The notes: generated by a model not told the origin, from the sequence alone. 64,000 nt of DNA from Octopus sinensis (GCF_006345805.1 NC_043000.1:126542001-126606000), one strand, 5' to 3'; shown: positions 1 to 63,280, counted from the first letter of the stretch. Numbers and translations are program-made.

Positions 1-310
1 GCATGTGTCTGGAGGGGAGAAAATCAGGTGTAGTGTTGGTGAATCTCAGGAAGCATGGAAGTTCTGAAGGATGCTGTGCTCCAACAACTAACAACAGATG
101 CTGGCAGTTTGTTCCATACTTCCACAACTCTTAGTGCGAAAAAATATTTCCGAAAGTCATGGTAGCTGTGCTGTTTTCTGACTTTGTAAACATGTCCATA
201 GGTGTTAGACAGGCGGAGTTTGGAAAGGTGCTCAGAGTTATTGTTTGTAAGATGGTTAATAATTTTATGGGTGTCTGCCAAGTCAGCTACCAGACGTCGG
301 AGTGATTTAT
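1..310 (-). mobile_element. CR1-clade LINE 3' fragment
   Basis: NTYGHVYKVRK...FRKYFFALRVVEVWNKLPASVVS matches the CR1/L2 TRGHxxK...FFxxRVxxxWNxLP terminus. Confidence 0.85.
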
Positions 311-1241
311 GCCAAAAATCACTGATGCTCTCAAAAGATTGTACTGAAGTACTTCTACAAACTATTGTAAATTTCCCTAAGATGTTTATATCAAAACTGT
401 ATCTGAATCAAGATATAAATGCAAACTTCACCTGTCACTCGTTGCTATGCATGTGAAAGATAAGCTGAAGAATTTTAGAAAGTTTAGTTACTTTTGTGCT
501 GAGATTTTCATAAAGCAAAACAAAAGTCTGTGAATTTTAACATGTTAATTGCCTCATGTAGCACCAGTGGTTCATTGCAAACTTCACACAACTGCCATAT
601 GCACCACATGTAGTTGGTAAATTTTCATGATTTGAGAAAATATTTTATTCTGTATCCACGGTGATATGGTTTTGAGGATATTTAAATAATACAAGTGCTA
701 AATATTAAAGTTTAATTGTGAAATATTGTAAAAATGTGAAAAAAAAGAAAAAACAATATATTTCCTTGTAATTAAATAGTACGCAGTATAACCAGAAACA
801 TGTGGCACCACTGGTCATTTCAAGTAACAGGCTATGACAGTTAACATGTTAAATATTGTCCTTAATTGTTTTGTAGCTCTTAAAAAATGGCTCCATGTTT
901 TGTACATGGCTACATTGTTAGTCTTCATCTAAGTGTTCTAGCCATGACCATTCCATCTTATTTTCCAGACAGTGTATCAAAGACTATATTGTCCAATGTA
1001 TTATTATTACTATTATTATCAGAAAGTTGTGACATGATGAAAATTTGGCTGTATAGTTTTCTGGCAACTACCTCAAACATTTTATCTTACTCTGATTTTT
1101 TTGTTCAACAAATATTTATTTTTTTGTGTGTGTGTGTGTGTGTGGGGGGGATAAATCTTTTTAGAAGCAAAATATTAAATAACTATAAAAATTTAAGTAT
1201 AACTAATTACTTATATGTTTTGTTCTACTTTGTATTTATAG

Positions 1242-1374
1242 AAAGAATCAACTTGCAAAACAGCACCAGGGGCTTATTTCCAGACCCGTAGTAATACTTT
1301 AATTGTGGAACTTAACAAACTAACAAGTTCAAATACTGTTTACCGATTCTCTATATTAACAGCTACAAATCATG
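1242..1374 (+). CDS. Internal exon of an unnamed convergent gene: KESTCKTAPGAYFQTRSNTLIVELNKLTSSNTVYRFSILTATNH(G); CUB-like C-terminal half
   Basis: Pyrimidine-rich tract ending tatag, 133-nt stop-free frame, ATG|GTAAGT donor at 1375; CUB resemblance is by eye only. Confidence 0.68.
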
Positions 1375-1937
1375 GTAAGTCTGATATTTTCCCTTTTATG
1401 TTAGGCATATGGTTTATTGGTTGAGGGTGTTACACTCAAAAACATAAGATCATAATTTCGATTCCAAGATCAGTCTATGTTTTGTATTCTTGAGCAAAAC
1501 ACTTCATTTCATGTTGCACCAGTCCACTCACCACGCAAAATGAATTCCAGCAATAACTGGGAAGTTAATCCTGTGACAGACTAATGTCCCATTCAATGGC
1601 GGAGGGGGAGTGTTGTGAACGCAGTCACTTATTTACAATGGAAACCAGGCTTGTCTCTAGTTTTATAAGTCCTAGAGCTCTTGGATAAAAAAGGTCTATA
1701 CCATTTTAGTTTATGATGTCAAAGTCTGCATATGTTACATGACAAGTGGCACACTGGATTTTAAATAAATTGTGTACAGGGGTATGGTTTGCATGAAAAC
1801 ATTGGTTGCTGGAACTTAGCATTATTGTGTAACTATTGACTGATTTAAGCTTTTTGAAACAATTTGGTAAGTCATCATCATCACTTATTGTTAGTTTTCC
1901 ATGCTGGCATGGGTTGGATGTAATCTTCAAATTTTAA

Positions 1938-2155
1938 CCCATTCGTTACCAACCCAGCTAAAACCGGCTCTGGCTCTGTAGTACAAATGTCTTGTTTTCA
2001 TAAGTTTTGAATTAAAATCTTCCACCAAACCTTAGTCACAATTTATGTTCCTAACACTAACTGAATGATAACTAAGTTATTTTACTAAATTCTTTATATT
2101 TAAAGTAATTGAAAGAAACACAGAGCATCTCAAAATATATACAATAACGAAAAGG
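1938..2155. mobile_element. piggyBac-type MITE (family P1)
   Basis: TTAA|CCCATTCGTTAC...TAACGAAAAGG|TTAA; inverted copy at 15719-15930. Confidence 0.8.
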
Positions 2156-2964
2156 TTAATTTTGATAAAATGGCCATTGGAAGTGCAAAAGATACTTTGT
2201 TTAACAGTCTGTAGGCTGTCTTGGAGGTCAGCTGAAACTGGGTTTTCCTATCGCATAAGAAAAGGGTTCCATACTAGATGAAATCTTCTTTTCAATTCTG
2301 CTCAATGATCAATGCTCTTACAGTTGCTAGTTTTATCTGCAACCCTTCCTTCTACACACATGCAACATAACTATCCAAACTATTCTCACCACTACAAAAA
2401 CATACGAGTGTCTCAATTCATCAACTTCTGTTTCATTGACGTCCAGAATGGTCCATTTCATCTTTCTTTCTTTGTAGTTTATTCTGTCACAAGGCTATTC
2501 TGCAACGTTGCCTTTATTGATCTTTATAAAAGATAACTAATCTTTTTAAATAACAAATCAAAAAAGTATACATCACCTCACATAATATTGGCTTCAAATT
2601 TTGGCACAAGGCCAGCAAGTTTAGAGAGGGAGTGAGTCAATCACATTGACCACAGTGTTCAACTGGTATTTATTTGACTGACCCTGAAAGGATGAAAGGC
2701 AAAGTCAACTGTGGCAGAATTTAAACTCAGAACTTGAAGATGGATGAAATGCCTGGTGGCATTTCATCTACCAGCTTGCTGCATTCACTACCTCACATAA
2801 TATTAACCATGCTACTTTGTTTTATCAATATATAAAATATTTCATATTTAGTTTTTCTTTAAACAAATAATACTTTTAATTACAGTTTATAAATTTTACA
2901 CTCCTACCTCTTCAGCTATTGTTAGATATCTATCTATATCATCTTTGTCATTTTGCATTCATTT

Positions 2965-3600
2965 GTCCATGCTGGACAAGATGAGGTGCTGCACCAGACT
3001 CCAGTCTGATTTGGCATGGCTTCTACAGCTGGATGCCCTTCCTAATGCCAACCACCCCAAGAGTGTAATAGGTGCTTTTACGTGCCACTGGTATGGGTGC
3101 CAGCTACGTGACACCAGTATCTGCCACAGCTATGATTTCACTTGGCTTGATGGCTCTTCCTTCTCAAGCACAGCATATTGCCAAAGGTCTCTGTCGTTTC
3201 TCATTGCCTCCATGAGGCCCAATGCTCAAAAGGTGCTTTTTACATGCCACCAACAACAGCCACAACTATGATCTGTCTTGTCTTGATGGGTCATCTCAAA
3301 CATGGCATATCGCCAAAGGTCTCAGTCACTAGTCATTGTCTCTGTGGGGCCCAACATTCAAAGATCATACTTCATCACCTCATCCCATGTCTTCCTGGGT
3401 CTCCCTCTTCCACAGCTTCCTTTCATTGGTAGAAATCGGCACTTCTTCAAACTGCTGTCCACATCCATACACATCACATAACCATACCAATGCAGCCGTC
3501 TCTCTTGCGCACCACATCTGATGCCTCTTATGCCCAGCTTTTCTCTCAAGACATTTACACTCTGTTATGTATGCACACTGACAATGCACATCCAGCAAAG
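2965..3600 (-). mobile_element. RTE LINE family D 3' fragment (RT C-terminus plus 3'UTR; ORF end duplicated)
   Basis: ORFs give REKLGIRGIRCGAQERRLHWYGYV...GRGRPRKTWDEV; continues into the GGCACGTAAAAGCACC...GGAAGGGCATCCAGC 3'UTR. Confidence 0.85.
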
Positions 3601-3607
3601 GACGCTA

Positions 3608-4002
3608 GCTTATATATATATATATGAAGCTGAAGTTGTCTGTGTATGGCAGGTTTGGTAGCCTTCAACTAACACTATCTCTTCCGAGACCCTGCGGCGC
3701 AAGTTGACCAAAATTAAGAGTATGATAGAAGGCTTGCACTTCTTTCCGTAGAAGAAAAAATTCAAATCGGACCATGTTAACACCAAAAATTATTTACGTC
3801 AAAAAGGTGCTTTTTTTCTATGAAAATCCCTATTTTTTACGATTTTTTTACTGCTGTGTTGCCATTTTACGGTGTATTTCAACCAGAAAAATGTTCACTT
3901 AAAGAGAATAACAAGCTACATAATGCAAAATTTTTACTTTTAAAAAAATTCCAATTCTAAAGGGTCGAAACAAACCCAAGCAACGCCGAGCGATACTGCT
4001 AG
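3608..4002 (+). mobile_element. Non-autonomous Helitron (same 3' end as 23022-23400, different interior)
   Basis: AAACCCAAGCAACGCCGAGCGATACTGCTAG|T; 5' end in a TA run followed by gaagctgaagttg. Confidence 0.7.
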
Positions 4003-4058
4003 TATATATATATCACTATGTAAAAAGTCTTATATTGTTTTTATTTTTTTTAATTCAG

Positions 4059-4156
4059 GTCCAAAGATTCACAGATTAAGTGGTAGTCCAAGCTTGAAGA
4101 CTTACTCCATATCAAGGATATTTATTCTAATACTAGTTTGCGTCAGCCTACACTGA
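4059..4156 (+). CDS. Terminal exon of the convergent gene: (G)PKIHRLSGSPSLKTYSISRIFILILVCVSLH*; GPI-anchor-signal-like
   Basis: ttttttttaattcag acceptor; phase 1 matches exon 1242-1374; SGS small-residue site, polar spacer, hydrophobic tail, TGA 4154-4156; AATAAA at 4344 and 4404. Confidence 0.66.
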
Positions 4157-5399
4157 CAAATTCACAAAAAAAAGGAAATAAATATTAAATTAAATATTCT
4201 TCTTCTTCGAAATTTCAGACATCCATAAATTATTTATGAAATTACTGATTAACTTCTGAAATTATCGCTTCATTTTCTGCATGAGAGGGTTAAATGCTGG
4301 ATGATTTAAATTCATGAAAAATACCATGTTTGCCATGCAGGAAAATAAAAAAAAGAATGAAGTTCACACTTGAAATTTAATGCTGAAATTATCGTATTCC
4401 AGCAATAAATATTTACTCACTAATATGACGCCACAATTTTAGAGGAACGGACTTAGACATTCATTTTTTCTAAAAATGTGAGACTAAATAACTACAGCTC
4501 ATTGCCATTATGGTGACACCCATTGCTTACATTAACTTTTAAGTGACTATTCAATGTTTAGATGCTTTGATATGAAGTTAAGACGCTGAACTACAAGCCA
4601 TAGTTCAAATCTTGTGCCCCTTAGTAAAGCACACTGGTGCATGGCTAAACAAAGAACAAGCTCCACTATTTTCTTCACAGGTGAATAATAGCAGTAAGAA
4701 GAATATCTTGGCTCTAGACATAAGTCTACAGTAAATATAACAACTTAACCAATGCAAGCATAGAAAAATGATATAAAGACGTACGAAGTAAATAAAATAA
4801 AATAAAAACTTCTGCATGACTAACAGTTACTGTAGAAATCAAATAATTCAGCAATATATATGATTGATCTCTTGCTGTATTTAATACATCTAAATAATAT
4901 ACAAATATTTATATTATTTTTCTTTTTAGTCTGTATAAACTTATTGTATTGAAACCAAATTAAAACAACTCCATAAAGCTTTTTTTTTCAATTTTACAGG
5001 TATATTTGTTATTATTATTATATTGCATTTCATTATTACCATTATTGTCATAAAAAATCTCTACAGCTTAACCTGACATCTTGGGAAAGTCATTGCCTAG
5101 ATCGATCTGCATGGCGTAAGATGTGTCATGATGCATCCAAACAATTTGAGTTGAAGAAAAAGAACAATAGGAGAACTATAAGCTACAATCAACAGACACC
5201 TTTACCAAATCCCAGGCAAAATCAAAATCATCAATTTCCCAATTGCAACTTCATAGCAAAAACCCATCCTTGAACTGAAATTACATTCACACATCCATTG
5301 CAAATGGATGCTGCTTCTTAGATTTTTTTTTTGTTCTTTGTTTCCATTACACTCTTTAAGTCCTCTCCTCCAAATAGGAGTGACCATCATTATTATTAT

Positions 5400-7530
5400 T
5401 ATTGAGCTGGCAGAATTGTTAGCACACTGGACAAAATGCTTAGTGATATTTCATCTGTCTTTATGTTCTGAATTCAAATGCCGCCAAGGTTGACTTTGCT
5501 TTTCATCCTTTTGGGGTCAATAAAATAAGTACCTGTCAAGTACTGAGGTCAATGTAATCTACTATCCTTGCTTCCCCAAAATATCAGGCGTTGTGCCTAT
5601 AGTAAAAAAGATTATTATTAACCCCTTGATGCCGGTATTACCTGAAGCATGCGAGACACTGCTCTGGTTTTTTTTTTTATCTAATGAGACCACACAAACA
5701 CACAAGTGCCAACGAGCTCGCGTCTATTTACGTTCACCGTTACAATAACATAGCGTCGTACATTTACATCTACCGGTTTATGAAAACGAACTATGTGAAG
5801 CTATTTATCATAATATGATATGCAAGAGTTATTTTGCTCAAGTTCAAAAAGTAGCTTGCGTGTGGTACAACTCAAAACATGGTATTATGCATGTAAAGTA
5901 TCTGCATGTCATTGGTCTACTGCTAGTCTCATGACTTGAACGTAACCTAAAATAGCTAAGATAATGCACGGGACAGTGAGTGCGCGCACCTCAAGAGACA
6001 AAGTACACAACAGCGAACATAAACAGTCAGCCGCTAAAAAGTCCGTGATAGATGCAGGCCAGCTCTACATCGTATATTTACGTTAACCGCGGGTAGGCAA
6101 GCAAAAGTGTGATCGCATATTTGCGTCAACTGTTGTGACGCAAACTGTTAAGGCAGTGAGCTAGCAGAATTGTTAGTGTCACACAAAATACTTAGTGACT
6201 TTTTTCTGGTTTTACACAGAGTTTAAATATTGCTGAGGTTGACTTTGCCTTTCAACCTTTCATGGTCAATAAAATAAGTACCAGTCAAATACTGGGGTTG
6301 CTGTACCATATTTTCCGGCATACAAGTGAACATAGCATATATAGTATAAACATATAGTGTTAATATTCACACACTGTTACTATCTTTCCAAATCCTTTTG
6401 CATTTCATGTAGAATTTTTGATTCTCCAAAGTTGTTTTGATGTACAAAAATACAGTAATTTCCTCACTCAGAGACAGAGTTCAACAGCACCCAAAGCACA
6501 AGTGTTTAGCTCTAAATATTATTATTATTAGCATGCCAGACAAAATACTTAGCATATTTTATCCATCTTTATGTTTTGAGTTCAAATTCCACTGAGGCTG
6601 ACTTTGCCTTTCGTCTTTTTGGAGCTGATAAAATAAAATACCAGTTGATTACTAGAGTCCATATAATCATCTAGCTTCCTCCTCTAAAATTGCTGGCCCT
6701 ATGCCAAAATTTGAAACCGTTATTATTATCATTATTATTATTGAGTGAGAGAGCAGTGCATGCCATCAAAGTTGACACTGGGGTAAAATATATGAAGCCT
6801 AGTATACCCATCATGACTACACGTCTGATAAGGGTACACCAGGAACATGTATCACAACCAAATGTGCGTGATATGATGATCTCATATCAAGATAAACAGC
6901 ACATGACCTTGCAGGTGGGGCCCAGTTAGAATATTCTTCTGGTCGAGTAACCCATCCCGCTCAAAAGGTCCCTGAATAAGGGTTGTTTAAGGATGTTGAA
7001 CGAAACTCCCATGTTTCCAGAGGTAAATTATTCAAACCCTGAAGAATCCCTCTCAATACATGGCTATGATGCTCCCCCACTACTTCTGCATGTGATCAGA
7101 GATGCACATATCGTCAGCCACTAAGGGACATGCTCAACTGGTTAAGGTCAAACAACTGACAAGCAAATCTGTAGTATTGAGCAGAATATTTGCTGTAGCC
7201 CATCTTTTATACTAAGACATAACAATGTACATGATAACACTTCCAATCAGTTAAGATCAGAAGCCATGAGAGCCACTGCCTGGTAATGCATCAGGGGTGC
7301 TACTGCTACTACTATTATTATTATTAAGGTAGCGAGCTGGCAGAATTGTTAGCACACTTAGCAGTATTTTATCCATCTTTATGTTCTGACTTCAGATTCT
7401 ACTGAGGCTGACCTTGCTTTTCCTCTTTTCAGGGTTGATAAGTACCAGCTGAGCACTGGGGTTGATGTCATCAACTATTCTCTTATCCCAACATTTCAGG
7501 TCTTGTGCCTACTGTAGAAAGGATCATTAT
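5400..7530 (+). mobile_element. Region with four degenerate SINE family B copies (about 5400-5615, 6150-6300, 6530-6720, 7325-7530)
   Basis: Core motif gactttgc(c/t)tttcatc recurs in each. Confidence 0.65.
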
Positions 7531-7544
7531 TATATATATATCAT

Positions 7545-7960
7545 CATCATAATCATCGTTTAACGTCCGATTTCCATGCTAGCATGGGTTGGATGGTTCG
7601 ACCGGGGTCTGGGAAGCCAAGAGGTTGTACCAGGCTCCAGTCTGATCTGGCAGTGTTTCTACAGCTAGATGTCCTTCCTAGCGCCAACCACTCCGTGAGT
7701 GTAGTGGGTGCTTTTTATGTGTCACCGGCACAGATGCCAGGGGAGGCTGGCAACGGCCACGACTGGTTGGTGCCTTTTACGTGCCACCGGCATGGAAACC
7801 TGTCAAGGTGGCGCTGGCATCGGTCATGTTCGGATGGTGCTTTTTACGTGCCACTGGCACAGGTATCACAACTACAATTTCCATTTGACTTTTTGATGTT
7901 GATGTACTTGACTCAATAGGTCTCCTCAAGCACAGCAGGTTGCCCTACAATCCAAGGTAA
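7545..7960 (-). mobile_element. RTE family D 3'UTR with 3 internal repeat units and (GAT)n tail
   Basis: catcatc gtttaacgtcc...ctggatgcccttcc motif; near-identical structure at 11615-11985. Confidence 0.85.
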
Positions 7961-7978
7961 GCACAGCAGGCCATCCTG

Positions 7979-8017
<39 letters not shown>

Positions 8018-8104
8018 TTTTTACTTGAGTGGCTGCAATTCTCAAACAGATTTAGAAATTTTTAATTTTATATAAAATTATACAAGAAATCAAAATGAAT
8101 AAAT

Positions 8105-8110
8105 TTTATT
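8105..8110 (-). terminator. Candidate AATAAA polyadenylation signal for TMTC4
   Basis: AATAAA on minus strand about 160 nt after the stop codon; the motif is common in AT-rich DNA. Confidence 0.45.
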
Positions 8111-8271
8111 TGTAAACTCTGGACATTCACATATGCTATAACAAGTGAAATAATATATGTCTTGTAAAAATATAAGTTCTATCAGATTTTGGATGTGAGA
8201 TGCAATGATACAGAAATGAACCACCTCAAGAGACAATGTTAAGATAATTGGGTTTTTTTTCCTGAATTTAG

Positions 8272-8408
8272 CTAGCTGCCTTGCTTCAATTTCTTTTGCA
8301 CGGTCTGTAAATATTCCTGGGCATTTTTTAGTGATGGATTTAGAAGAAGTGTTTTTTCATATGCTGCCTCAGCTTTCTCATATTTTCCCCATCGGTGGTA
8401 AAGTATAC
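8272..8408 (-). CDS. TMTC4: TMTC4 terminal coding exon: (G)ILYHRWGKYEKAEAAYEKTLLLNPSLKNAQEYLQTVQKKLKQGS*
   Basis: ttgcag acceptor, TAG at 8274-8272; human VLYHRWGHLDLAKKHYE. Confidence 0.94.
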
Positions 8409-8564
8409 CTGCAATCAGTAAAAAACAAAATAAAATAATGATTAATTTTAATATGCTGATTGTATACAATACTGAGAAACAGTCAATATAAGTTCGTTGT
8501 TATTTTCTGATTAAATATGTAAGAAAGGAATGCAAGTAATAAACAAATAATTAATTTTAATGTG

Positions 8565-8810
8565 CCCTTTTAAAGCCTAGCCAGGCTCATGGGCCCGGTT
8601 TCCTGGTTTCAATGGCGTATGTGTTCCCCACCTGGATGGGACGCCAGTCCATTGCAGCGTTACTCATTTTTGCCAGCTGAGTGGACTGGAGCAATGTGAA
8701 ATGAAGTGTTTTGCTCAAGAACACAATGCGTCACCTGATCCAGAAATTGAAACCACAATCTTACGATCATGATGCTGACACCCTAACCACTTGAGCCACA
8801 TGCCTCCACA
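8565..8810 (-). mobile_element. SINE family C (tRNA-like head, TGTGTTCTTGAGCAAAACACTT CORE/V-like domain)
   Basis: Same repeat at 1405-1690(+), 29400-29665(-), 42370-42700(+), 48275-48590(-), 49170-49420(-), 49450-49685(-). Confidence 0.8.
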
Positions 8811-8874
8811 ATAAACAAATAACATTCGTTAGTTTTAAACTTCAAGAATATTTGCCTTATTTGTTTCACAAAGG

Positions 8875-9275
8875 CGATGGCAATGACGAGTGACTGAGAC
8901 CTTTGGAGATATGCTGTGCTTGAGAAGACCCAGCAAGCCAAGTGAGACCATAACCATGTCCTATGCCAGTACAGCATAACTTCAACCATTGGGCAACAAA
9001 CTGCGCTTGTGAAGATCTGTTGAGTCAAGTGAAGTTATGGTCATGGCCGATGCCAGTGCCAGCTGACTGGTTCCTGTGCCAGTGGCACGTAAAAAGCACC
9101 CACTACACTCTCAGAGTGGCTGGCATTAGGAAGGGCATCCAACTGTAGAAACCTTGCCAGATCAGATTGGTGCCTGGTACAGCCTTTGGACTTGCCAGTC
9201 CTCTGCCAAACCGTCCAACCCATGCCAGCATGGAAAGCAGACATTAAACAATAACGATGATGATGATGATGATGA
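8875..9275 (+). mobile_element. RTE family D 3' end
   Basis: ORF end gacctttggagatatgctgtgcttgagaagac plus 3'UTR plus (GAT)n. Confidence 0.85.
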
Positions 9276-10601
9276 AGAACCAGTTTGAGATGGATTCTAG
9301 TTTTATTACCCAAAATGGTTAGTCAATAAAAAGATTTTGATATACCCGCTAAATTACATTTTCATTTGTATCATACTTCATGTATGTACACTGTCAATAG
9401 GCCAGTTACTGCAGTAATAACATCTCTTATAGATTTGCTGTGTTGAAAACAATAAATATCAGAGAGAGAGATGAAAATTCATGCCAGCAACAGTTAGCCA
9501 GAGCACCAAGGGTTGAAATGCATCAGGTGCTTTTGCTGGCCACAGTTACAATGAACTCTCTCTAATACTTGTGTTTTTAAAACAGCAAATCCATTAGAAA
9601 TATCATCAGAAGACAAATACTCCCTCAATTGAGTATACTGGATACTTTTCCATGATTTTAAAAATCTGTTTTAATGTTTCATTCATCTGCCATCGTACGT
9701 TTTGTCAGATGAATTCATCAAATGTCAAATAATTCTTTTTTATTTCTATGTGTCAGAATTAGCTATACACAACATATTATGGTCGGTGACACAAAACAAA
9801 CACTGCTATAAAACAAGAAATCTTGCAGAGAGCTCGAAAATAAAAGAATAATAAAATCTAGTAAAGTCACTACAACATTAGAACAGACAATACTATCCAC
9901 ATAATTATATATCATTATCATCCATTTTAATGTCAACTTTACCCTGCTTGCTTGGGTTAGACAAGAATATGCAGGGGTAGAGTTTTCTACAAATAGATGA
10001 CCTTCCTGTCATCAACAATCCCATTTGTTTGCAAAGAGATAATAATCTTCCAGTCTATCAAACAATAAAAGGTCCAGATATGTTTATGTTGAGAATTGGA
10101 AACAAATGACACAAGATGAATGAATCTTTTGTTTATACTGTGTAACATGCCAAAAAGGCCTAGATGTGCTTTTGTGGTGGATTGCAAAACAAATGGCAGT
10201 GCTTGTGAAGCCATTGTTAGCAACCAGCCCCCCTAAAAAAGCATGTAGGTGAGGAAATATGAACTCAATCACACAAACACACACAAAATTTCATATTTCA
10301 TACTTAAAAAAAAACAAGTATGTGTGTATATGCATATATATGTACATATGTGAATGCATATGCATAAATGTAAATGTATGTTTGTGTATGTGTGTGTATA
10401 TATATGTGTGTGTGTGTTTTATAATAATTACTGGTATCCTTATATATTACTATATTTTATATCTTATATGTAAAGCATAATATGTTATACATGTATGTAT
10501 ATTATTGTAATTATCAGTTTAGTAAATAAATAAATAAGTTAACATTATATAATGTCTAAAAGTTGATGAACCACCTATTGATCTCCTCCATTTTCTTATT
10601 G

Positions 10602-10640
<39 letters not shown>

Positions 10641-10709
10641 AATATCTATGGAATACTCAGCCACTTCAAGTCATTCTGCCTACATTTTGTTAGTCTGTAG
10701 AAGGTCTAT

Positions 10710-11100
10710 GCTGAGATACCATGTTCTGAGATATAGTGTACAAGTGCTGTTTGCAGTGTGAGAGTTGACAATGGATTTAGTGAAGAATTTGAAGTACAGC
10801 TTGGTGTACCTCTGAGCTTAGTTCTAAGCTCTCTTCTGCTTATTATGATCCTCAAGACTGTAACAGAGGAATCTGGGAGTTGTTGTCTGTGGAAGTTCCT
10901 GCAGTTTAATGATCTAGTTCTCATGACTGAACAGATCAATTATTTGGAGAAAAAGTTCTGAATTAGGAAAGAAAGCTTTGAATCAAGAGGCCGAACAAGG
11001 ATAAAGATTTTAGTTAGAAGGAAGTGGGATTGGAGCTTGTTGCCTTTGGGAAAAAGGCCATGCATGATATTAAGGAAGTGGGGTATTTGAGTTCCATATG
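10710..11100 (+). mobile_element. Degenerate RTE reverse-transcriptase core fragment
   Basis: VRVDNGFSEEFEVQLGV...VLSSLL...LWKFLQFNDLVL is a decayed QGSVLSP / YADD region. Confidence 0.75.
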
Positions 11101-11209
11101 GTGTGTTCATTATAAACCATATATATATATGTCCTGTACTCATGTATAATTATTTATATATGCATGTATATATACATGTAGATGTAGGTACGTACATATA
11201 TGTCTGTAT

Positions 11210-11546
11210 CATCATCATCATCATCATCATCATCGTTTAACGTCCGTTCTCCATGCTAGCATGGGTTGGACGGTTCGACTGGGGATCTGGTAAGCCAGAA
11301 GGCTGCACCAGGCTCCAGTCTTATCTGGCAGTGTTTCTACAGCTGGATGCCCTTCCTAACGCCAATAGTATGTATGCATATATTTTTATTTATCACATAT
11401 ATATATATATATATATTATATGTAGAAAAATACAAACTGGGACAAGAACGTAAAACATTTAGAAGACGATACAAAAAACACGGACGGGACATTCGAAGCC
11501 TTCAATCTTCAGTCAAGAGCCGGATCATCCTAGCAATTTCGGCTGA

Positions 11547-11613
<67 letters not shown>

Positions 11614-11985
11614 ATCATCATCGTTTAATGTCTGTTTTCCATGCTAGCATGGGTTGGACAGTTCGACCGGGATCTGGGAAGTCAGAGGCTGCACCAGGCA
11701 CCAGTCTGATCTGGCAGTGTTTCTACAGCTGGATGTCCTTCCTAACACCAACCACTCCATGAGTGTAGTGGGTGCCTTTTACGTGCCAGGAGAGGCTGGC
11801 AACAGCCACGATCGGTTGATGCTTTTTACGTGCCACCAGCACGGAAGCCAGTCAAGGCGGCACTGGTATCGGCCATGTTTGGATGGTGCTCTTTACGTGC
11901 CACGGGCACAGGTATCACAACTACAATTTCCATCTGATTTTTTATTTTGATGTTAATGTACTTGACTCAATAGGTCTCATATATA
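11210..11985 (-). mobile_element. Two RTE family D 3' ends separated by (TA)n and an unrelated 130-bp insert
   Basis: Tails at 11210-11365 and 11615-11985. Confidence 0.8.
11552..11612. repeat. (TA)n microsatellite, one of many (also about 7980, 10605, 34735, 38845, 53890, 56470)
   Basis: Direct. Confidence 0.95.
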
Positions 11986-12279
11986 TATATATATACATAT
12001 ATAAAAAAGATGTGTTGTATAAAACAGGTAGGCTGAGAGGGAGAGTGACCTTCATGTGTGACAGATGCACCAGGTGTTGGTTGTGAGCGTGCAAATGATA
12101 AAGTATTTTGAGGCCTTCTTAGAAGTGGTTGAAGGCTTCTATACCTTTGTAACCTGTTTGGTAATGGAGGAAGCTGTTCTGAAGGAATAGTTGCTGAAGT
12201 AGGAATAGAGTGGGAAAGTTCAGGGAGTTACTGTCTCTATTAGTAACAATATTCCCAGACTGAAGTCTCAGATTGAGTG

Positions 12280-12480
12280 ATACTTGCGGACAGAGCATGG
12301 TGCTTTATAGTTATGAGACATGCACTTTGAAACCAGAGGATTTGTGAAGGTTTAGAGAGGTGAGGCAAGCATGGTCTGATAGATGTGTAATGTTGGTGTG
12401 CATGAGTAACACAGTGCAGATGAGCTGAACAAGAGGAGCTAGATATGGAAAGAAGTGAATGTGGTGTGCAAGAGAGAGGA
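12280..12480 (+). mobile_element. Degenerate RTE RT C-terminal fragment
   Basis: SMVLYSYETCTLKPEDL...EASMV like RTE MLHGSETW...EASML; frameshifted. Confidence 0.55.
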
Positions 12481-12484
12481 TTCA

Positions 12485-12930
12485 TCATCATCATCATCAT
12501 CGTTTAAGATCCACTTTCCATGCTAGCAAGGGTTGGACGATTTGACTGAGGACTGGTGAACTAGATGGCTGCACCAGGCTCCAATCTTGATCTGGCAGAG
12601 TTTCTATAGCTGGATGCTCCGAGAGTATAGTGGGTGCTTTTACGTGCCGCCAGCACGAGGACCAGTCAGGCGGTACTGGCAACGGCCATGCTGGAATGGT
12701 GTTTTTTACATGCTACCTGCACAGGAGCCAGTCCAGTGGCACTGGCAACGATCTCGCTCGGATGCTTTTTCCCGTGCCACCGGCACAAGGGGTGACACTG
12801 GTGGCGATCACGCTCGAATGGTGCTTTTTATGTGCCACCAGCATGGAAGCCAGTTAACTACTCTGACAACGACCATGCTCGGATGGTGTTTTTAGCACTC
12901 CACTAGCACAGATGCCAGTCACCGAACTGT
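12485..12930 (-). mobile_element. RTE family D 3'UTR with 5 internal repeat units
   Basis: Same ordered units as 26450-27050. Confidence 0.85.
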
Positions 12931-13954
12931 CATTTTAACGAGATTTTTTACTTATTTATCACCCAAGATACGTTCACACCACCGGATGCTCCTGTACAAG
13001 TTTTTGTGTGTCCCACAAGAGGAGTCAATGCTGGATGTGTCGAAACAATTGTTGTGATTAATAATATATTCTCGTATATTCCATTTTCAGTCTTTTATTT
13101 GTTATTTATATATATATATGTTTATATATCCACATTTATATACTTGTAACACAGACAAACAAGAAAATACAACTCAAAGCATGAATGTGTGTATGTGCAC
13201 GCGCACACACACACACAACAAATGGAAAAAACATCTATTCTCTCACTTCACTTCTCTATCTGCTCAGTTTTTATATAAATGTTTATACATACATATATGC
13301 ATATATAAATTATATAGATATATATATATATTTAATTTGCAGAAGTTACTAATGCTGATTAAAAAAAAAAATGTATACATTTATATAATTTTTGAAGTTG
13401 TAATTTCAACATTTTTGTTGATTTTTTCAAGTATTTTCCCCAGCTGTGTTGATAAACTAAAAATGTAACATAGTGAAGTTTCAATGCAATTAATATTTTC
13501 AAATATTTATATTGATTAGTTTAATTTCATTTTCCCCCACTCCCAATACAAAGCAAACAAGAAAAAGCTTGATTTTAATCAATATCTTTTGAAGACATGG
13601 TTCACAGAGAGAAGTATGGATAGTCATTTACATTACATGCCAGAGCGGTTAACTAGCACCTGTGCCGGTGGCACGTGTAAAAAGATTCAAGGTCATTGCC
13701 AGTACCGCCTGACTAGCCCCCGTGTTGGTGGCACGTAAAAGCATCCACTACACTCTTGGAGTGGTTGGTGTTAGGAAGGGCATCCAGCTGTAGAAGCTCC
13801 ACCAGATCAAGATTGGAGCTTGGTGCAGCCATCTGGTTCGCCAGCCCTCAGTCAAATCGTCCAACCCATGCTAGCATGGAAAGCAGACATCAAACAATGA
13901 TGATGATTAACAAATAATATTAATGGAACTTCTTAAAAAAATACACAATAGACA

Positions 13955-14235
13955 CAGGTATGGTTGTGTGGCACCTTGGGCAAGTGTTTCTATGACCAAA
14001 GCCTTGTAAATGGATTTGGTAGATAAAAACTGAAAGAAGCCTATCATGTGTGTGCATGTTTGTCTCTACAAGTGTTGGTGTGTTTACGTCCCTGTAACTT
14101 AGTAGTTCAGCAAAAGAAACTGATAAAATAAGTATCAGGTTTAACAAAAAAATAAGTACTGGGATTGATTCATTCAACTGAAAATTCTTCAAGACTATGC
14201 CCCAGCATGGCCACAGTCAAATGACTGAAACAAGT
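13955..14235 (+). mobile_element. SINE family A, degenerate
   Basis: Similarity to other copies. Confidence 0.7.
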
Positions 14236-14823: not shown

Positions 14824-15486
14824 GCTGCACAACTGATCTGCCATATTCACTCATGATTATGAGCAATGCTGGTAATATGATAGGGTTGTCAGTGAATAAA
14901 CCAATTCTTCCGCACTTGACTGGTAATGAGGGTTACTAGAAACTCTGTAGGACAAACAAAATAGCTGTCAAAAAAAAAAAAACCAGTGAACCTAACATGG
15001 AATCAATGACTATCTAGCAACAGAAATTCCAAGATAGTGTCCAGTAGGTCTAGCATGCTGCAAAATCACTGAGAATAAAGTACTTTTATAGTTTTTGTTA
15101 AAGCATGTCTCTACATTGGCAGTGTAACTGGGTTGGTAATCTGGTCTCGGTAGCCTGGGAATGGAGGCAGACTAGAAGAAAGCTAACTGAGTATAAACAC
15201 TCAGTGTCTGTGAGCGCAAGCAGAGATGCAAAGGAAAAGGGAGTCAACCCTGACAATCAGATTAAAAGAGAACTTGAGACTCAAACCTAATCATCCTGAA
15301 GCGAATATAGACACAAGTCCTGTTTAATGTCTGTTTTCCTTGCTTGCATGGGTTGGATTGGTTTGACAGGAGCCCGTGAGAGAGAGGACTGTGCCAAGCT
15401 CCAATGTCTGCTTTGGCATCGTTTTTACAGCTGGAGGCCTTTCCTAAACCTAACCACTTCACAAATGGATGATAAAATTCACCTAC

Positions 15487-15669
15487 CTAAGTTTAGATAA
15501 TACCGGGCTGTGTCTGGCTTCAATTTGATTGCAGTGAGAAAGTTACGCTCACTTTCTTTATATCGACCCAGTTTCCCAAGTATACTTGCTAGATGAAGAT
15601 ACAAAATAGATTCTCCTGGAAGGTGGCGCAGAGCCACATTGCACACAGTTTCAGCAGCTGTTAGGTTTC
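15487..15669 (-). CDS. TMTC4: TMTC4 exon 13 (TPR): (G)NLTAAETVCNVALRHLPGESILYLHLASILGKLGRYKESERNFLTAIKLKPDTARYYLNL(G)
   Basis: atttcag acceptor, GTAGGT donor, 183 nt, phase 1-1. Confidence 0.94.
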
Positions 15670-15718
15670 CTGAAATATAAACAAGAATAACAGAAAATTA
15701 TGATTTTTTTTTATTTAA

Positions 15719-17924: not shown

Positions 17925-18486
17925 ATCTCTCTATCCACTCAGTCGAAGTCGACTCTCGGTCACTCGTTGGATCAGTGTCCTCCAGTCAGTTCTATCCTGG
18001 GCCGCTTCTTTCAGATTGGCTATGTCCATTCTGGTATCACTCTTGATGGTGTCAAGCCAGCGGGTTCTTGGTCGGCCTCTTCCTCTCTTGCCACTGACCA
18101 TTCCGAGCATGATGTCCTTCTCCAGGGATTTTCTCCGCATAATATGACTGAAATATGCCAATCTATGCTTGGTGATCCTAGCTTCTAGCGACATTTTTGG
18201 CCTTATCTGCTTAAGAACTTCTCCATTGGTGAGCCTCGCTGTCCATGGAATCCGTAAAAGTCTTCTCCAACACCAAAGCTCGAATGCATTAATTCTTTTC
18301 TGGTCAGCTTTCTTTAGTGTCCAGGTCTCGCATCCATATGTTGCTATTGGGAAGACAATTGCATTCACCAATCTGCATTTGGTAGCGAGTCTGATGTCTC
18401 TACTCTTCCAGACCCTGCTCATGCTGACCATTGCCTCTCTGCCTAGTACTATCCGCTGTCTTATTTCTGGAGTGCAGTCACCTTCT
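17925..18486 (-). mobile_element. 5'-truncated BovB/RTE-clade LINE, intact RT C-terminal ORF (about 185 aa)
   Basis: DCTPEIRQRI...FPIATYGCETWTLKKADQKRINAFELWCWRRLLRIPWTAR...KRGRGRPRTRWLD closely parallels the BovB ORF C-terminus; short (AG)n tail after stop at 17931. Confidence 0.9.
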
Positions 18487-18560
18487 CGACAATGGGTTTC
18501 TTTCAGTTTCCGTCTACCAAATCCACTCACAAGGCTTTGGTCGGCCCAAGGCTATAGTAT
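18487..18560 (-). mobile_element. SINE family A, head-side fragment (split by RTE insertion)
   Basis: gggtttctttcagtttccgtctaccaaatccactcacaaggctttggtcggcc. Confidence 0.85.
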
Positions 18561-18989
18561 AGAATACTGTAACACTACCTCTTCAATGCTTTAACAACTC
18601 AGTATCATCCTTGCCATTGTTTTTAACATTCATGTTTCCATGCTGGCATGAATCAGACAGAGTTCCTTGAGGCAGATTTTACAATGGCTGGATGCCCTTC
18701 CTGTCACCAATCCTTGCCTGTTTCCAAGTAAAGTAATGTTTCCTCATGATCAGACATGGTTTCGTGGAAGAATGGAAATGAAGGACAGTGCTTCAATAAT
18801 GAAGCTGATCGTTGTGTAATGTTAGGACAAAGAGATACACAAACGTACGTATATGTGTGGGTTTATTTCAGCATCTGTCTACCAAATCTGTTCACAAGGC
18901 TCATTGTGTGGGATTGAACCTGAAACTATGTAGTTGGGAAGCAAATATCTTAAACATAGTCATGCCTGTACCTATATATTCTTTTCAAT

Positions 18990-19402
18990 TCTGGCAGCTG
19001 ACTTGGCAGACACCCATAAAATTATTAACCATCTTACTAACAATAACTCTGAGCACCTTTTCAAACTTCACCTGTCTAACACCTGTGGACATATTTACAA
19101 AGTCAGAAAACAGCACAGTTCCCATGACTTTCGGAAACGTTTTTTTCATGCTAAGAGTTGCTGAAGTATGGAACAAACTGCCGGCATCAGTTGTTAGTTG
19201 TCAGAGCACTGCATCCTTCAAAACTTCCATGCTTCCTGAGATTCACCAACACTACACCTGATTTTCTCCCCTCCAGACACACGCAAGCACGTATCTGCCT
19301 CATACACTGTTCACTTTCCAGACATTTTGTACATCACTGCATATGCTTTATACGCACTTTTGACAAGTTGTGGTGCACCTGAGCACTGTATACAATAATT
19401 TC

Positions 19403-22440: not shown

Positions 22441-22711
22441 AGGTGTCTTGCTGTAGAAGAGGTACAAGGTTATCCAGTGAGAGAGAGAGAGAGAATGAGG
22501 ACAGAAACATGTGTGCTGCTGTAAAGGAGATACATGGTTACCCAGCCTGAGGGAAGAGCAGGAGAAGGGGAGAAAGAGTGGGAGACAACAAGAGTACAAG
22601 AAAGAGCAGGAGAGAGATGGTGGATGTTAAAAACAATGATGATGATGATAACTTCACAAGTAGAAATGATGAAGGTAAAAAAAAAAGTTTCTGTGAAATG
22701 AATACACTTAC

Positions 22712-22853
22712 ACAGTTTCCCATATTATAATAACAGTCTGGATAGTTCCGCCGGTGCTGAATAGCTGTGCGATAACTAGATAAAGCTTCTTCATATTTTT
22801 TCTGAGATGCCTTAACTATGCCAAGATTCATCCAGGCTGTGGAAAACGAAGGT
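22712..22853 (-). CDS. TMTC4: TMTC4 exon 11 (TPR): (R)PSFSTAWMNLGIVKASQKKYEEALSSYRTAIQHRRNYPDCYYNMGNC
   Basis: gtcag acceptor, GTAAGT donor, 142 nt. Confidence 0.94.
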
Positions 22854-23021
22854 CTGACATTGCATAAAAAAAAAAAGAGAAAAGAAATCATTAATATTAA
22901 ACAACAATAAAGTTAGGTATGAAAATTGTAAACCTATTTTGGAAAACAGAAATGTAAAAAGACATAATTCAATAGGAAATACTTAGAATACAAACATTAT
23001 TGGAATGGAGTCAACTGTCAA

Positions 23022-27485: not shown

Positions 27486-27529
27486 CTAGAACAAAAATAA
27501 ATAAATAAATATTTTGAATTCCATATGTC

Positions 27530-27715
27530 TAATACTTGTGTACATGCTTACAAAATCAAATAACAACACAGCACCTATGAGTTTTGGGAACATTTTTTTC
27601 ATGCTCAGAATTGTTGAAGCATGGAATAAACTACCTGCATCAGTTGTTAGCTGTCGGGACACTGCATCCTTCAAAACTCCATGCTTCCTAAAATTCATCA
27701 ACAGTACACCTGTTG
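27530..27715 (+). mobile_element. CR1-clade LINE fragment
   Basis: FFMLRIVEAWNKLPASVVSC. Confidence 0.75.
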
Positions 27716-27747
27716 GTCAATTTCCCCCTTTTTTAATGACTTATTCA

Positions 27748-28125
27748 CTCTCTTTTACTAGTTTCAATCATTTGACTGTGGCCATGCTGGAGCACCGCCT
27801 TTAGTCAAACAAATCGACCCCAGGACTTATTCTTTGTAAGCCTAGTACTTATTCTATTGGTCTCTTTTGCTGAACCGCTAAGTTACAGGGACGTAAACAC
27901 ACCATCATTGGTCGTCAAGTGATGTTGGAGTGACAAACACACACACACAAACAAATACACACACACACATTTATATATATATATATATACATATATACGA
28001 CAGGCTTCTTTCAGTTTCTGTCTACCAAGTCCACTCACAAGGCTTTGGTCAGTCTGAGGCTATAATAGAAGACACTTGCCCAAGATGCCATGCAGTGGGA
28101 CTGAACCCGGAACCATGTGGTTCGA
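27748..28125 (-). mobile_element. SINE family A
   Basis: Similarity to other copies; head end interrupted. Confidence 0.8.
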
Positions 28126-39480: not shown

Positions 39481-39735
39481 ACCAATGGAGTGTCACAACA
39501 TATATATTAAGGGCTTCTTTTCAGTTTCTGTCTACTAAATCCACTCACATGGTTTTGGTTGGTCCGAGGCTATAGAACATAGACACTTACCCAAGGTGTC
39601 ATGTAGTGGGACAGAACCTGAAACCAAATGGTTAGGAAGCAAACTTCTTACCACACAGCCATGCCTAATGCTTGTATGCAAAAAAATTTTTTAAAAGGAA
39701 ATAAAAATGTAAAAGATTTTGAGTGACATATTTAC

Positions 39736-39913
39736 CTTTTTAGAAAAGACATTGTGCTGACAAAACTGCTGGAGCCCAATCACAAATAACATACAGTAGC
39801 CAACACTGGGCAAGTACAGGATGCGTTCAGCTATTACAAAACCAACACGAAAGAACAGATTACTGGCCGGAAGGAATGGTATGAGTAGAAATGCAATGGA
39901 TAAAAGAAGCAGC
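39736..39913 (-). CDS. TMTC4: TMTC4 exon 6: (R)LLLLSIAFLLIPFLPASNLFFRVGFVIAERILYLPSVGYC...FSKK
   Basis: ggcag acceptor, GTAAAT donor, 178 nt; TMTC signature PFLPASNLFFRVGFVxAERxLYLPS. Confidence 0.95.
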
Positions 39914-40046
39914 CTGCCAATGAAATAGAAATGAGAGAAAGAGTTAAAAATAAAATGTAAATAAATAAACGAATGATGATAAACAAAGGGGAGATGAACA
40001 AAGCAGTCTTTTGGTACAGTGAAACTTATAAATACATGCAAATATA

Positions 40047-40415
40047 GGTGTGGCTGTGTGGTAAAATTTGCTTCCCAGCCACATGGCTCTTGGTTCAGTC
40101 CCGCTGAATGGCATCTCAAGCTGACCAAAGCTTTGGGAATGGATTTGGAAGATGGAAACTGAAAGAAGCCTATCATATGTATAATGTGTGTGTGTGTGTG
40201 TGTGTGTTGTGTGTGTGTTTGTTCTCCCACTGCTTGATAATAACCCGTATTGGTGTGTTTATGTTCCCGCAACTTAGCGGTTTAGCAAAAGAGTCTAATA
40301 GAATAAGCAGCAGATTTTAAAAAACAAATAAGTACTGGGGTTGATTCGGTGGACTAAAATGTTTCAAGGCAGTGCTCCCGCATGGCCACAGTCTAATGAC
40401 TGAAATAAGTAAGAG
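40047..40415 (+). mobile_element. SINE family A (older variant)
   Basis: Head and tail similarity; lies just upstream of the exon 6 acceptor. Confidence 0.75.
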
Positions 40416-47292: not shown

Positions 47293-47742
47293 GGGCCTAT
47301 ACATACATAGTTATGTACAATAACACAGAGTGTAGTTTATGCTTTTAAACATTTTATGTGTGCGCGTGTGTGTGTGTGTGAGTGTATCTCTGTCCCCACC
47401 ACCGCTAGATAACCAGTGTTGGTGTGTTTATGTCCCTATAACTTAGTGATTCAGTGGAAGAGGTTATTAGAATAAGTACCAGGCTTTAAAACAAGTAAGT
47501 GCTGAAGTCAATTCATTCAACTAGAATTCTTCAAATTGATGAACCACCTTGGCTGCAGTCTAATGATTGAAACAAGCAAAAGATAAAAGATTAAAGATCC
47601 AGGAGTTTTTTTTTTTCCTTAATACCCAGCATTGGTGCACTTTACTACCAGATTACATGCAAAAAAACAAAAAAAAGAAACAAAAGCAAAAACAAAAAAA
47701 AAAGGAAACTATAAATAAATTTGAGAATAAATTATGACTTAC

Positions 47743-47904
47743 TCTGAGGTAAAAACTTGAGACAAATGAATGTGGATTATCAACAATCTGAAACGTTGGA
47801 GGTTTGAATCCCATCAGCTTCCATCGAAGAGCCAATAACAGAATTCCAGAAACTATCAATATGAGGTGTCGTAGAAGTAAAGACTTCCCCCAACAAGGCA
47901 CTTT
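47743..47904 (-). CDS. TMTC4: TMTC4 exon 4: KVPCWGKSLLLRHLILIVSGILLLALRWKLMGFKPPTFQIVDNPHSFVSSFYLR
   Basis: tttcag acceptor, GTAAGT donor, 162 nt; RWxxMGxxPPxFxxVDNP motif. Confidence 0.94.
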
Positions 47905-63185: not shown

Positions 63186-63192
63186 GACTTAC

Positions 63193-63280
63193 CTGTATTG
63201 CAAGCCTTGATGTAAGATAATATAGATAACGTAACAAGTAAAGCACAAAGTAAATCTGCACGTCCAACAACACCAGCAAC
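63193..63280 (-). CDS. TMTC4: TMTC4 exon (1st in window): [29 protein letters not shown](G)
   Basis: ttccag acceptor, GTAAGT donor, 88 nt, ends phase 1. Confidence 0.95.

What the first reader, a model, noticed from the sequence alone, without database searches (positions are those of the whole stretch)
1242..4156. Hidden convergent gene invisible to the ORF track: CUB-like segment plus GPI-anchor-like tail
Seen: an exon with a strong acceptor and a GTAAGT donor (1242-1374) splices in phase to a terminal exon (4059-4156). The joined frame reads ...TCKTAPGAYFQTRSNTLIVEL...YRFSILTATNHGPKIHRLSGSPSLKTYSISRIFILILVCVSLH*. Known: GPI signals have a small-residue omega site about 20-30 aa from the C-terminus, then a polar spacer and a hydrophobic tail; S-G-S sits 24 residues from the end. 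Inference: this is the 3' end of a cell-surface, probably CUB-domain protein, lying tail-to-tail with TMTC4 about 4 kb away.
Basis: partly seen in the sequence, partly recalled or inferred. Interest (0 to 1): 0.7.

Follow-up and report, generated by a model that had tools for sequence, protein, structure and literature searches.

The report
Last exons of octopus CUB gene

Summary
Exon 1242-1374 (AG acceptor, GTAAGT donor) and exon 4059-4156 (T-rich tract, CAG acceptor, TGA stop) join in frame to a 76-residue peptide. That peptide is 100% identical to residues 108-183 of XP_029635579.1, "uncharacterized protein LOC115210930 isoform X1" of Octopus sinensis. The first 14,156 bases of the window are identical to that species' chromosome record CM016862.1.

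The gene has four coding exons. Exons 1 and 2 lie just left of the window. The same gene, followed by the same convergent TMTC-family gene, is annotated in O. vulgaris and O. bimaculoides. Cuttlefish RNA-seq contigs carry the orthologue uninterrupted across the homologous junction.

The Pfam CUB model does not match. A structure model of the O. vulgaris orthologue, however, finds solved CUB domains as its best matches, and four cysteines are conserved at CUB-like spacing.

The C-terminus fits the layout of a GPI attachment signal (S-G-S, ten-residue spacer, hydrophobic end with no cytoplasmic tail). I checked this only by rule of thumb, because no GPI predictor was available.

The protein evolves fast (dN/dS 0.6-0.9 between close species), yet its reading frame is preserved. 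Verdict: a correct reading of an already annotated gene of unknown function. Interest is low.

The parts
1242..1374 (+). Coding exon 3 of 4 of LOC115210930. It encodes residues 108-151 and the first base of Gly152: the C-terminal third of the CUB-like domain, including conserved Cys112.
   Evidence: Acceptor AG at 1240-1241 and donor GTAAGT at 1375-1380. Equals L011 17785-17917 in the only GT-AG model that reproduces XP_029635579.1. Strands 106-110, 119-121, 126-132 and 141-149 of the model fall here.
1375..4058 (+). Intron 3 (2,684 nt), filled with interspersed repeats.
   Evidence: GT...AG borders. Repeat copies at 1872-1920, 2582-2750 and 2990-3079 recur elsewhere in the window. Aligned parts are 86-88% identical to O. 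bimaculoides and carry many indels.
4059..4156 (+). Coding part of the terminal exon 4. It encodes residues 152-183 (linker plus C-terminal hydrophobic propeptide) and the TGA stop at 4154-4156.
   Evidence: Pyrimidine tract plus CAG acceptor at 4056-4058. Equals L011 20602-20699. The peptide is identical to the C-terminus of XP_029635579.1.
4079..4087 (+). Codons for Ser159-Gly160-Ser161, the best candidate omega / omega+1 / omega+2 site for GPI attachment.
   Evidence: This is the only small-x-small triplet with a 5-10 residue spacer before the hydrophobic tail (rule-of-thumb scan). It is conserved in all three octopus species, and G-T-S lies close by in the alignment in Sepia. Inference, not a predictor result.
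4118..4153 (+). Codons for IFILILVCVSLH, the hydrophobic C-terminal end with no cytoplasmic tail.
   Evidence: Kyte-Doolittle 9-residue windows above 1.6 start at residues 168-175. Orthologues end in 17-residue hydrophobic stretches.
8272..8499 (-). Last coding exon and stop of the convergent TMTC-family gene (756-aa product). It is a neighbour, not part of the gene.
   Evidence: A called gene at L011 24815-30699 (-) carries PF08409 TMTC_DUF1736 and TPR domains. L011 24815 corresponds to window 8272. There is a TPR_1 hit on 8275-8499 (-).

Best explanation
Positions 1242-4156 hold the last two coding exons and the intervening intron of Octopus sinensis gene LOC115210930. Its first two coding exons lie just beyond the left edge of the window. 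The gene encodes a 183-residue precursor with four parts: an N-terminal signal peptide (exon 1), one divergent CUB domain of about 120 residues with four conserved cysteines (exons 2-3), a short Ser/Gly/Pro linker, and a C-terminal hydrophobic propeptide (exon 4). Shown: the gene structure, its identity to the annotated protein, conserved synteny, and the CUB fold of a predicted model. Inferred: the protein enters the ER; the GPI transamidase cuts at about Ser159 and replaces the last 24 residues with a GPI lipid anchor; the mature, roughly 134-residue CUB module then sits on the outer face of the plasma membrane as a binding module (co-receptor, auxiliary subunit or recognition molecule) rather than an enzyme. 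Its fast sequence evolution suggests a partner that also changes quickly. The confidence given is for the whole statement; by part it is about 0.97 for gene identity and structure, about 0.85 for the CUB fold, about 0.65 for the GPI anchor, and low for any specific function.
For: The joined peptide equals residues 108-183 of XP_029635579.1. Window 1-14156 is 100% identical to CM016862.1 from position 126,542,001. One GT-AG four-exon model reproduces the annotated protein in each of three octopus genomes, with a convergent TMTC gene downstream in all three. The orthologue P0003 (39-40% identity) sits as an uninterrupted 540-nt CDS on seven 0.9-2.0 kb contigs; three of the runs are Sepia esculenta RNA-seq. 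Its cDNA reads AAT AAA GGT CCT AAA where octopus has AAT CAT G|GT CCA AAG. The structure model (built for the O. vulgaris orthologue, 181 of 183 residues identical to the O. sinensis protein) has pLDDT 78 and pTM 0.70 and is all-beta between residues 26 and 149. Foldseek gives 86 PDB matches at E<=0.001, led by CUB domains (1spp_B E 2.6e-6, TM 0.79 normalised to the target, rmsd 2.9; also 1sfp, Neto2, TSG-6, PCPE-1, neuropilin, C1r). C36, C66, C90 and C112 are invariant in six sequences. The tail is S-G-S, then a 10-residue spacer, then 12 hydrophobic residues to the end; decapodiform orthologues have 17-residue hydrophobic ends. This compares with the published layout of a 5-10 residue spacer plus a 15-20 residue hydrophobic stretch (PMC9997660). 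There is no indel in 552 coding nt between O. sinensis and O. bimaculoides, against 9.4 gap openings per kb in the flanks (Poisson P=0.006).
Against: The Pfam CUB model gives no hit even at E<=10, on the fragment or on full-length orthologues. A profile search of PDB sequences gives only noise (IL-33, E about 0.8). The octopus hydrophobic tail (11-12 residues) is shorter than the textbook 15-20. No GPI or signal-peptide predictor was available. No octopus transcript was seen: the protein collections returned only genome-derived octopus entries, so the octopus splice rests on gene models plus cuttlefish cDNA. dN/dS is 0.87 for O. sinensis versus O. bimaculoides (29 substitutions) and 0.62 for a close sepiid pair, which means weak constraint over short times. 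The proposed function is inferred from domain type only.
Confidence: 0.65

Rival explanations
1. The gene and the CUB domain are real, but the C-terminal hydrophobic stretch is not a GPI signal. The protein is then either a tail-less single-pass membrane protein or a secreted, spermadhesin-like soluble CUB protein.
For: No predictor was run, and the octopus tail is only 11-12 hydrophobic residues with an Arg just before it. The best structural matches are soluble single-CUB spermadhesins. The omega-region sequence is poorly conserved between octopus and decapodiforms.
Against: Eleven or twelve residues are too short to span a bilayer. All orthologues end exactly at the hydrophobic stretch with no cytoplasmic residues, and all have small-x-small triplets 20-28 residues from the end. 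That layout is typical of GPI signals (PMC9997660). The apparent longer-tailed isoform (P0005/P0012) is a gene-caller artefact: TGA was read as Trp on a contig identical to the normal one.
Confidence: 0.25
2. In octopuses the locus is drifting towards a pseudogene or is barely expressed. The gene models are then homology or ab initio predictions of a relic.
For: dN/dS is 0.87 between O. sinensis and O. bimaculoides. The exon substitution rate (52.5 per kb) is close to that of the flanks (62.7 per kb). No octopus transcript-derived protein was found in the collections.
Against: The frame, all splice sites, all four cysteines and the exon lengths (85, 236, 133, 98 nt) are intact in three species. 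Coding sequence has no indels where about 5 are expected (P=0.006). dN/dS falls to 0.28 over the deeper decapodiform comparison, and the family persists across the octopod-decapodiform split. RefSeq lists two isoforms.
Confidence: 0.07
3. The two 'exons' are a chance pairing of splice-like sites and open frames in AT-rich DNA.
For: Short open frames and AG/GT dinucleotides are common in 35% G+C sequence, and AATAAA hexamers are frequent (166 in the window).
Against: The peptide is identical to an annotated protein. It is 84% identical to O. bimaculoides and 31% identical to a cuttlefish transcript product across both exons (E 7e-32 and 2.6e-4 against 1.84 billion representatives). The structure model places it in a folded domain.
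Confidence: 0.01

Closest known systems
Octopus sinensis LOC115210930 (XP_029635579.1 isoform X1, XP_036358355.1 isoform X2); orthologues O. vulgaris CAI9720890.1 and O. bimaculoides LOC106881363
   Same: It is the same gene. The window peptide is identical to residues 108-183 of isoform X1. It is 75/76 identical to O. vulgaris and 84% identical to O. bimaculoides. All three share the four-exon structure and the convergent TMTC neighbour.
   Different: Nothing differs in sequence. The public entries say only 'uncharacterized' or 'hypothetical'; UniRef names it 'CUB domain-containing protein'. No paper in the searched library mentions these identifiers.
Spermadhesins (PSP-I/PSP-II, aSFP; PDB 1spp, 1sfp)
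   Same: They are small proteins made of one CUB domain and nothing else, and they are the best structural matches (E 2.6e-6 to 2.4e-5, TM 0.73-0.79 normalised to the target). By general knowledge they are also fast-evolving.
   Different: Spermadhesins are soluble seminal-plasma proteins of ungulates without a C-terminal hydrophobic signal. Sequence identity is only 11-14%. No homology is detectable by sequence.
Neto1/Neto2 (and, by general knowledge, nematode SOL-1/LEV-10): CUB-domain auxiliary subunits of ionotropic receptors
   Same: They also hold CUB modules at the cell surface. Neto2 CUB domains in GluK2 complexes rank 3rd, 5th and 8th among structural matches.
   Different: Those proteins have two or more CUB domains, an LDLa domain, a true transmembrane helix and a cytoplasmic tail. 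This protein has one CUB domain and a probable lipid anchor. No functional link was tested.

Membership tests
LOC115210930 of Octopus sinensis (gene identity) | Genomic sequence and encoded peptide identical to the annotated record | tested here: met
   Window 1-14156 is 100% identical to CM016862.1 (L011 16544-30699). The peptide equals residues 108-183 of XP_029635579.1.
CUB domain (Pfam PF00431) | Match to the family profile above its gathering score | tested here: not met
   No Pfam hit at E<=10 for the 76-aa peptide, for exon A alone, or for the full-length orthologues P0001 and P0003.
CUB domain (fold) | Beta-sandwich of about 110 residues that superposes on solved CUB domains | tested here: met
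   Model of the O. vulgaris orthologue: pLDDT 78, pTM 0.70, with blocks covering residues 41-160 at pLDDT 74-94. Top PDB matches are CUB domains: 1spp_B TM 0.79 (normalised to the target) and rmsd 2.9, 2wno 0.69, 6gh8_A 0.67, 6f1d 0.64. Caveat: this is a predicted model built from a three-sequence alignment.
CUB domain | Four conserved cysteines spaced as two neighbouring pairs (C1-C2, C3-C4) | tested here: met
   C36, C66, C90 and C112 are invariant in six cephalopod sequences, spaced 30 and 22 residues apart. Actual disulfide bonding cannot be tested here.
Calcium-binding CUB subset | Conserved Tyr/Glu/Asp/Asp calcium-site residues | not tested
   No residue-level structural alignment was available. 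By eye, the Asp two residues after the third cysteine is Val in all six sequences (C-G-V), which suggests the site is incomplete. This is a lead only.
GPI-anchored proteins | N-terminal signal peptide | tested here: inconclusive
   Hydrophobic windows start at residues 9-16 of the full-length protein, followed by ...HCCNA|ER. No SignalP-type predictor was available, and exon 1 lies outside the window.
GPI-anchored proteins | C-terminal hydrophobic stretch that runs to the end with no cytoplasmic tail | tested here: met
   IFILILVCVSLH ends the octopus protein. FFTLTTLYVALLSYWLI and LTITALCTILLITWLVI end the decapodiform orthologues. The apparent tail extension is an artefact.
GPI-anchored proteins | Small omega and omega+2 residues followed by a 5-10 residue polar spacer | tested here: inconclusive
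   A rule-of-thumb scan finds S159-G-S161 with a 10-residue spacer, and G-T-S with an 8-residue spacer in Sepia. The layout matches PMC9997660. The scan is not a validated predictor, and the octopus tail is shorter than 15-20 residues.
GPI-anchored proteins | Release by PI-PLC / dependence on the GPI transamidase | not testable with these tools
   This needs a bench experiment.
TMTC family (neighbouring gene) | TMTC_DUF1736 domain plus C-terminal TPR repeats | tested here: met
   Precomputed PF08409 and TPR hits on the 756-aa product. TPR hits on window exons 8275-8499, 15482-15697 and 22541-22912 (-). Assignment to paralogue TMTC4 was not tested.

The most novel reading that the evidence does not exclude
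The gene belongs to a small, fast-evolving family of single-CUB, GPI-anchored surface proteins that may be restricted to coleoid cephalopods. It is too divergent for the Pfam CUB model, and no natural counterpart (a lone CUB module on a lipid anchor) turned up in the literature searched. Such a protein could be a lineage-specific co-receptor or recognition molecule.
Probability: 0.3. Interest if true: 0.35.

Novelty: already known. Interest (0 to 1): 0.15.

Why it matters
As a check on the scan, it matters that a reader working from raw sequence recovered a real two-exon gene end, its domain type and its likely membrane anchor. No ORF list would show this gene end. Biologically the gain is small: the gene model is already public in three octopus genomes. 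Three points may interest cephalopod biologists. First, the protein is an uncharacterised single CUB domain on a probable GPI anchor. Second, it was detected only in octopus and decapodiform sequences in the searches run here. Third, it evolves quickly (dN/dS 0.6-0.9 between close species). These features make it a cheap candidate for expression mapping, because many CUB-domain surface proteins organise receptors or mediate recognition.

Tried and rejected
- Pfam on the joined peptide, on exon A and on full-length orthologues gave nothing at E<=10, apart from a bMG3 hit at E 0.13, which is noise.
- The word-indexed protein search with the 76-aa peptide found no candidates, because its length window (42-133 aa) excludes the 183-aa protein.
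- A profile search of PDB sequences returned only interleukin-33 at E about 0.8, rejected as noise.
- P0002, the second phmmer hit (498 aa, E 3.5e-5, five stretches), is a tandem YNRITANNADIK repeat protein and was rejected as a low-complexity match.
- P0005 and P0012 looked like isoforms with a 23-residue tail after the hydrophobic segment, which would have argued for a transmembrane form. The contig is 100% identical to the one encoding P0011, and the 'extension' comes from reading TGA as Trp.
- A literature search for the gene and protein identifiers found no paper.
- A search for natural GPI-anchored single-CUB proteins found only an engineered construct, a GPI-anchored ADGRB3 CUB domain.
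- The remaining run accessions (SRR8281680 series, SRR27666067 series, SRR24189490, ERR3431203) could not be traced to a species; ERR12374249 (P0010) was not looked up.
- The AATAAA at 4177-4182, 21 nt after the stop, is not evidence of a poly(A) site, because the hexamer occurs 166 times in the window.
- A sub-threshold Pfam LT-IIB hit on the repeat ORF 27-407 (-) scored 18.6 bits against a cut-off of 25. I treat it as chance and did not pursue it.

Full report
**Observation**

The sequence is as described.
- Exon A, 1242-1374, follows a pyrimidine-rich tract ending in AG and is followed by GTAAGT.
- Exon B, 4059-4156, follows a long T-run and CAG and ends in TGA.
- The mechanical ORF list shows exon A only as a 39-aa GTG ORF and omits exon B.

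**Identity**

- A full HMMER scan of 1.84 billion representative proteins with the joined peptide gave three hits. The best was a 183-aa protein matching residues 108-183 at 84% identity (E 7e-32). It is O. bimaculoides LOC106881363.
- Its 90% cluster relatives include O. vulgaris CAI9720890.1 (75/76 identical) and O. sinensis XP_029635579.1, LOC115210930 isoform X1.
- The last 76 residues of XP_029635579.1 are exactly the window peptide.
- The O. sinensis locus (L011; CM016862.1 126,525,458-126,556,156) is 100% identical to window 1-14156, starting at L011 position 16544.
- The window therefore begins at CM016862.1 position 126,542,001.

**Gene structure**

- For each of the three octopus genomes I searched for chains of GT-AG exons that translate to the annotated protein. 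Exactly one model was found per genome.
- In O. sinensis the exons are L011 10001-10085, 16107-16342, 17785-17917 and 20602-20699. The last two are window 1242-1374 and 4059-4156.
- Exon 2 ends 201 nt before the window starts, so the window holds only the last two coding exons.
- In all three species a 756-aa TMTC-family gene (PF08409 plus TPR repeats) lies convergent downstream.
- In the window the TMTC coding end is at about 8272, 4.1 kb from the TGA at 4156. Its TPR exons are confirmed. I did not test whether it is paralogue 4.

**Transcript evidence**

- I could not query octopus RNA-seq. The protein collections held only genome-derived octopus entries.
- An orthologue (P0003, 179 aa, 39-40% identical) is encoded as an uninterrupted 540-nt CDS on seven contigs of 0.9-2.0 kb.
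- Three of those runs are Sepia esculenta larval RNA-seq (PMC10571815, PMC10141105).
- The cuttlefish cDNA reads ...AAT AAA GGT CCT AAA... where octopus has ...AAT CAT G|GT CCA AAG.... The motif TN(K/H)GPK therefore spans the junction and is conserved.
- Another decapodiform orthologue (P0011, 189 aa) is on 13 contigs.

**Domain**

- Pfam finds no CUB, or any other domain, even at E<=10. A profile search of PDB sequences gives only noise.
- An AlphaFold2 model of the O. vulgaris orthologue, which is 181 of 183 residues identical to the O. sinensis protein, has mean pLDDT 78 and pTM 0.70. It shows an N-terminal helix (the signal peptide), an all-beta core at residues 26-149 and a low-confidence C-terminal helix.
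- Foldseek against the PDB gives 86 matches at E<=0.001. CUB domains lead the list: spermadhesins 1spp/1sfp (TM up to 0.79 normalised to the target, rmsd 2.9 Å), Neto2, TSG-6, PCPE-1, neuropilin-2, enteropeptidase, TMPRSS6, Kremen and C1r.
- Four cysteines (C36, C66, C90, C112) are invariant in six cephalopod sequences at CUB-like spacing.
- Exon A encodes the fourth cysteine and the last strands of this domain.
- I therefore accept 'CUB-like' as a fold assignment and note that the family-profile criterion is not met.

**C-terminus**

- Exon B encodes G-PKIHRL-SGS-PSLKTYSISR-IFILILVCVSLH.
- A rule-of-thumb scan (small omega, small omega+2, no Pro at omega+1) leaves S159-G-S161 as the only candidate with a 5-10 residue spacer. 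The spacer is 10 residues and the hydrophobic end is 12 residues.
- The decapodiform orthologues have G-T-S or N-x-S/G triplets and 17-residue hydrophobic ends. None has any residue after the hydrophobic stretch.
- The published layout is a 5-10 residue hydrophilic spacer and 15-20 hydrophobic residues (PMC9997660). The decapodiform tails fit it well; the octopus tail is short.
- An apparent isoform with a 23-residue tail proved to be a gene-caller artefact, TGA read as Trp.
- I rate GPI anchoring about 0.65 likely. No predictor was available.

**Selection**

- Between O. sinensis and O. bimaculoides the CDS has 6.5 synonymous and 22.5 non-synonymous differences, giving dN/dS 0.87.
- A close sepiid pair gives 0.62, and a deeper decapodiform pair gives 0.28.
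- Exon substitution density (52.5 per kb) is barely below that of the flanks (62.7 per kb). The coding sequence has no indel where the flanks have 9.4 gap openings per kb (expected 5.2, P=0.006).
- The frame is thus preserved while the residues change quickly.

**Mechanism (inferred)**

- The precursor is a secretory protein. The signal peptide is removed, and GPI transamidation near Ser159 leaves a roughly 134-residue CUB module on the outer leaflet.
- It most likely acts as a binding module.
- No partner, tissue or phenotype is known, and no paper in the searched library mentions the gene.

**Novelty**

The gene model is already public, so the finding is 'already known'. The residual novelty is that this family (a lone divergent CUB domain on a probable lipid anchor, detected here only in cephalopods) is uncharacterised. 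The literature search turned up no natural GPI-anchored single-CUB protein, only an engineered one.

Noticed in passing
window 27-407 (-); also 18809-19258 (+) and 27505-27801 (+): A 127-aa open frame ending ...FALRVVEVWNKLPASVVSC.STASFKTSMLPEIHQHYT recurs three times in the window. From general knowledge it looks like the C-terminal tail of a non-LTR retrotransposon ORF. Its only Pfam hit (LT-IIB, 18.6 bits, cut-off 25) is below threshold and probably chance.
   Followed up: partly
window 17934-18551 (-): A 206-aa open frame (...YGCETWTLKK...WCWRRLLRIPW...GRGRPRTRWLD...) resembles, from general knowledge, the end of an RTE-type LINE reverse transcriptase. It has no Pfam hit at E<=0.01. It lies inside an intron of the TMTC gene.
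   Followed up: partly
window 1872-1920, 2582-2750, 2990-3079 and copies at 5447-5567, 6219-6316, 6555-6726, 7365-7441, 7547-7715: Intron 3 of the CUB gene and the intergenic/3' UTR region share several families of short interspersed repeats at 73-86% identity, in both orientations. The same elements produce many of the long spurious open frames elsewhere in the window.
   Followed up: no
L011 1-10990 (-) versus L011 10001-10085 (+) (outside the window, upstream): In O. sinensis the called span of an Rpr2-domain gene (185 aa, minus strand) overlaps exon 1 of LOC115210930. The two genes therefore appear to be head-to-head and overlapping.
   Followed up: no
whole CDS of LOC115210930 and orthologues (L011, L012, L002, L017, L013): dN/dS is high between close species (0.87 for the octopus pair, 0.62 for a sepiid pair) and 0.28 at greater distance. 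The two O. sinensis versus O. vulgaris differences (P13L, R157K) are both non-synonymous, with no synonymous change.
   Followed up: partly
L009 versus L013 (Logan contigs): Proteins P0005 (212 aa) and P0012 (248 aa) in the protein collection are translations of a normal transcript with TGA read as Trp. The 23-residue C-terminal extension they share (WEEILIHKNW...) is not real.
   Followed up: yes
P0007 = XP_036358355.1 (isoform X2, 153 aa); P0009 (153 aa, Logan): A shorter annotated isoform starts at Met31 (MESYDC...) and so lacks the signal peptide. A matching 153-aa product exists among the cuttlefish-cluster contigs. Whether this is a real alternative 5' end or a truncated model is unknown.
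   Followed up: no
window 8272-63331 (-): Coding exons of the convergent TMTC-family gene are spread over more than 55 kb. Exons are seen at 8275-8499, 15482-15697 and 22541-22912, with candidate coding stretches inside the open frames 39694-40281, 47656-47910 and 63080-63331. Its 5' end probably lies beyond the right edge of the window.
   Followed up: partly
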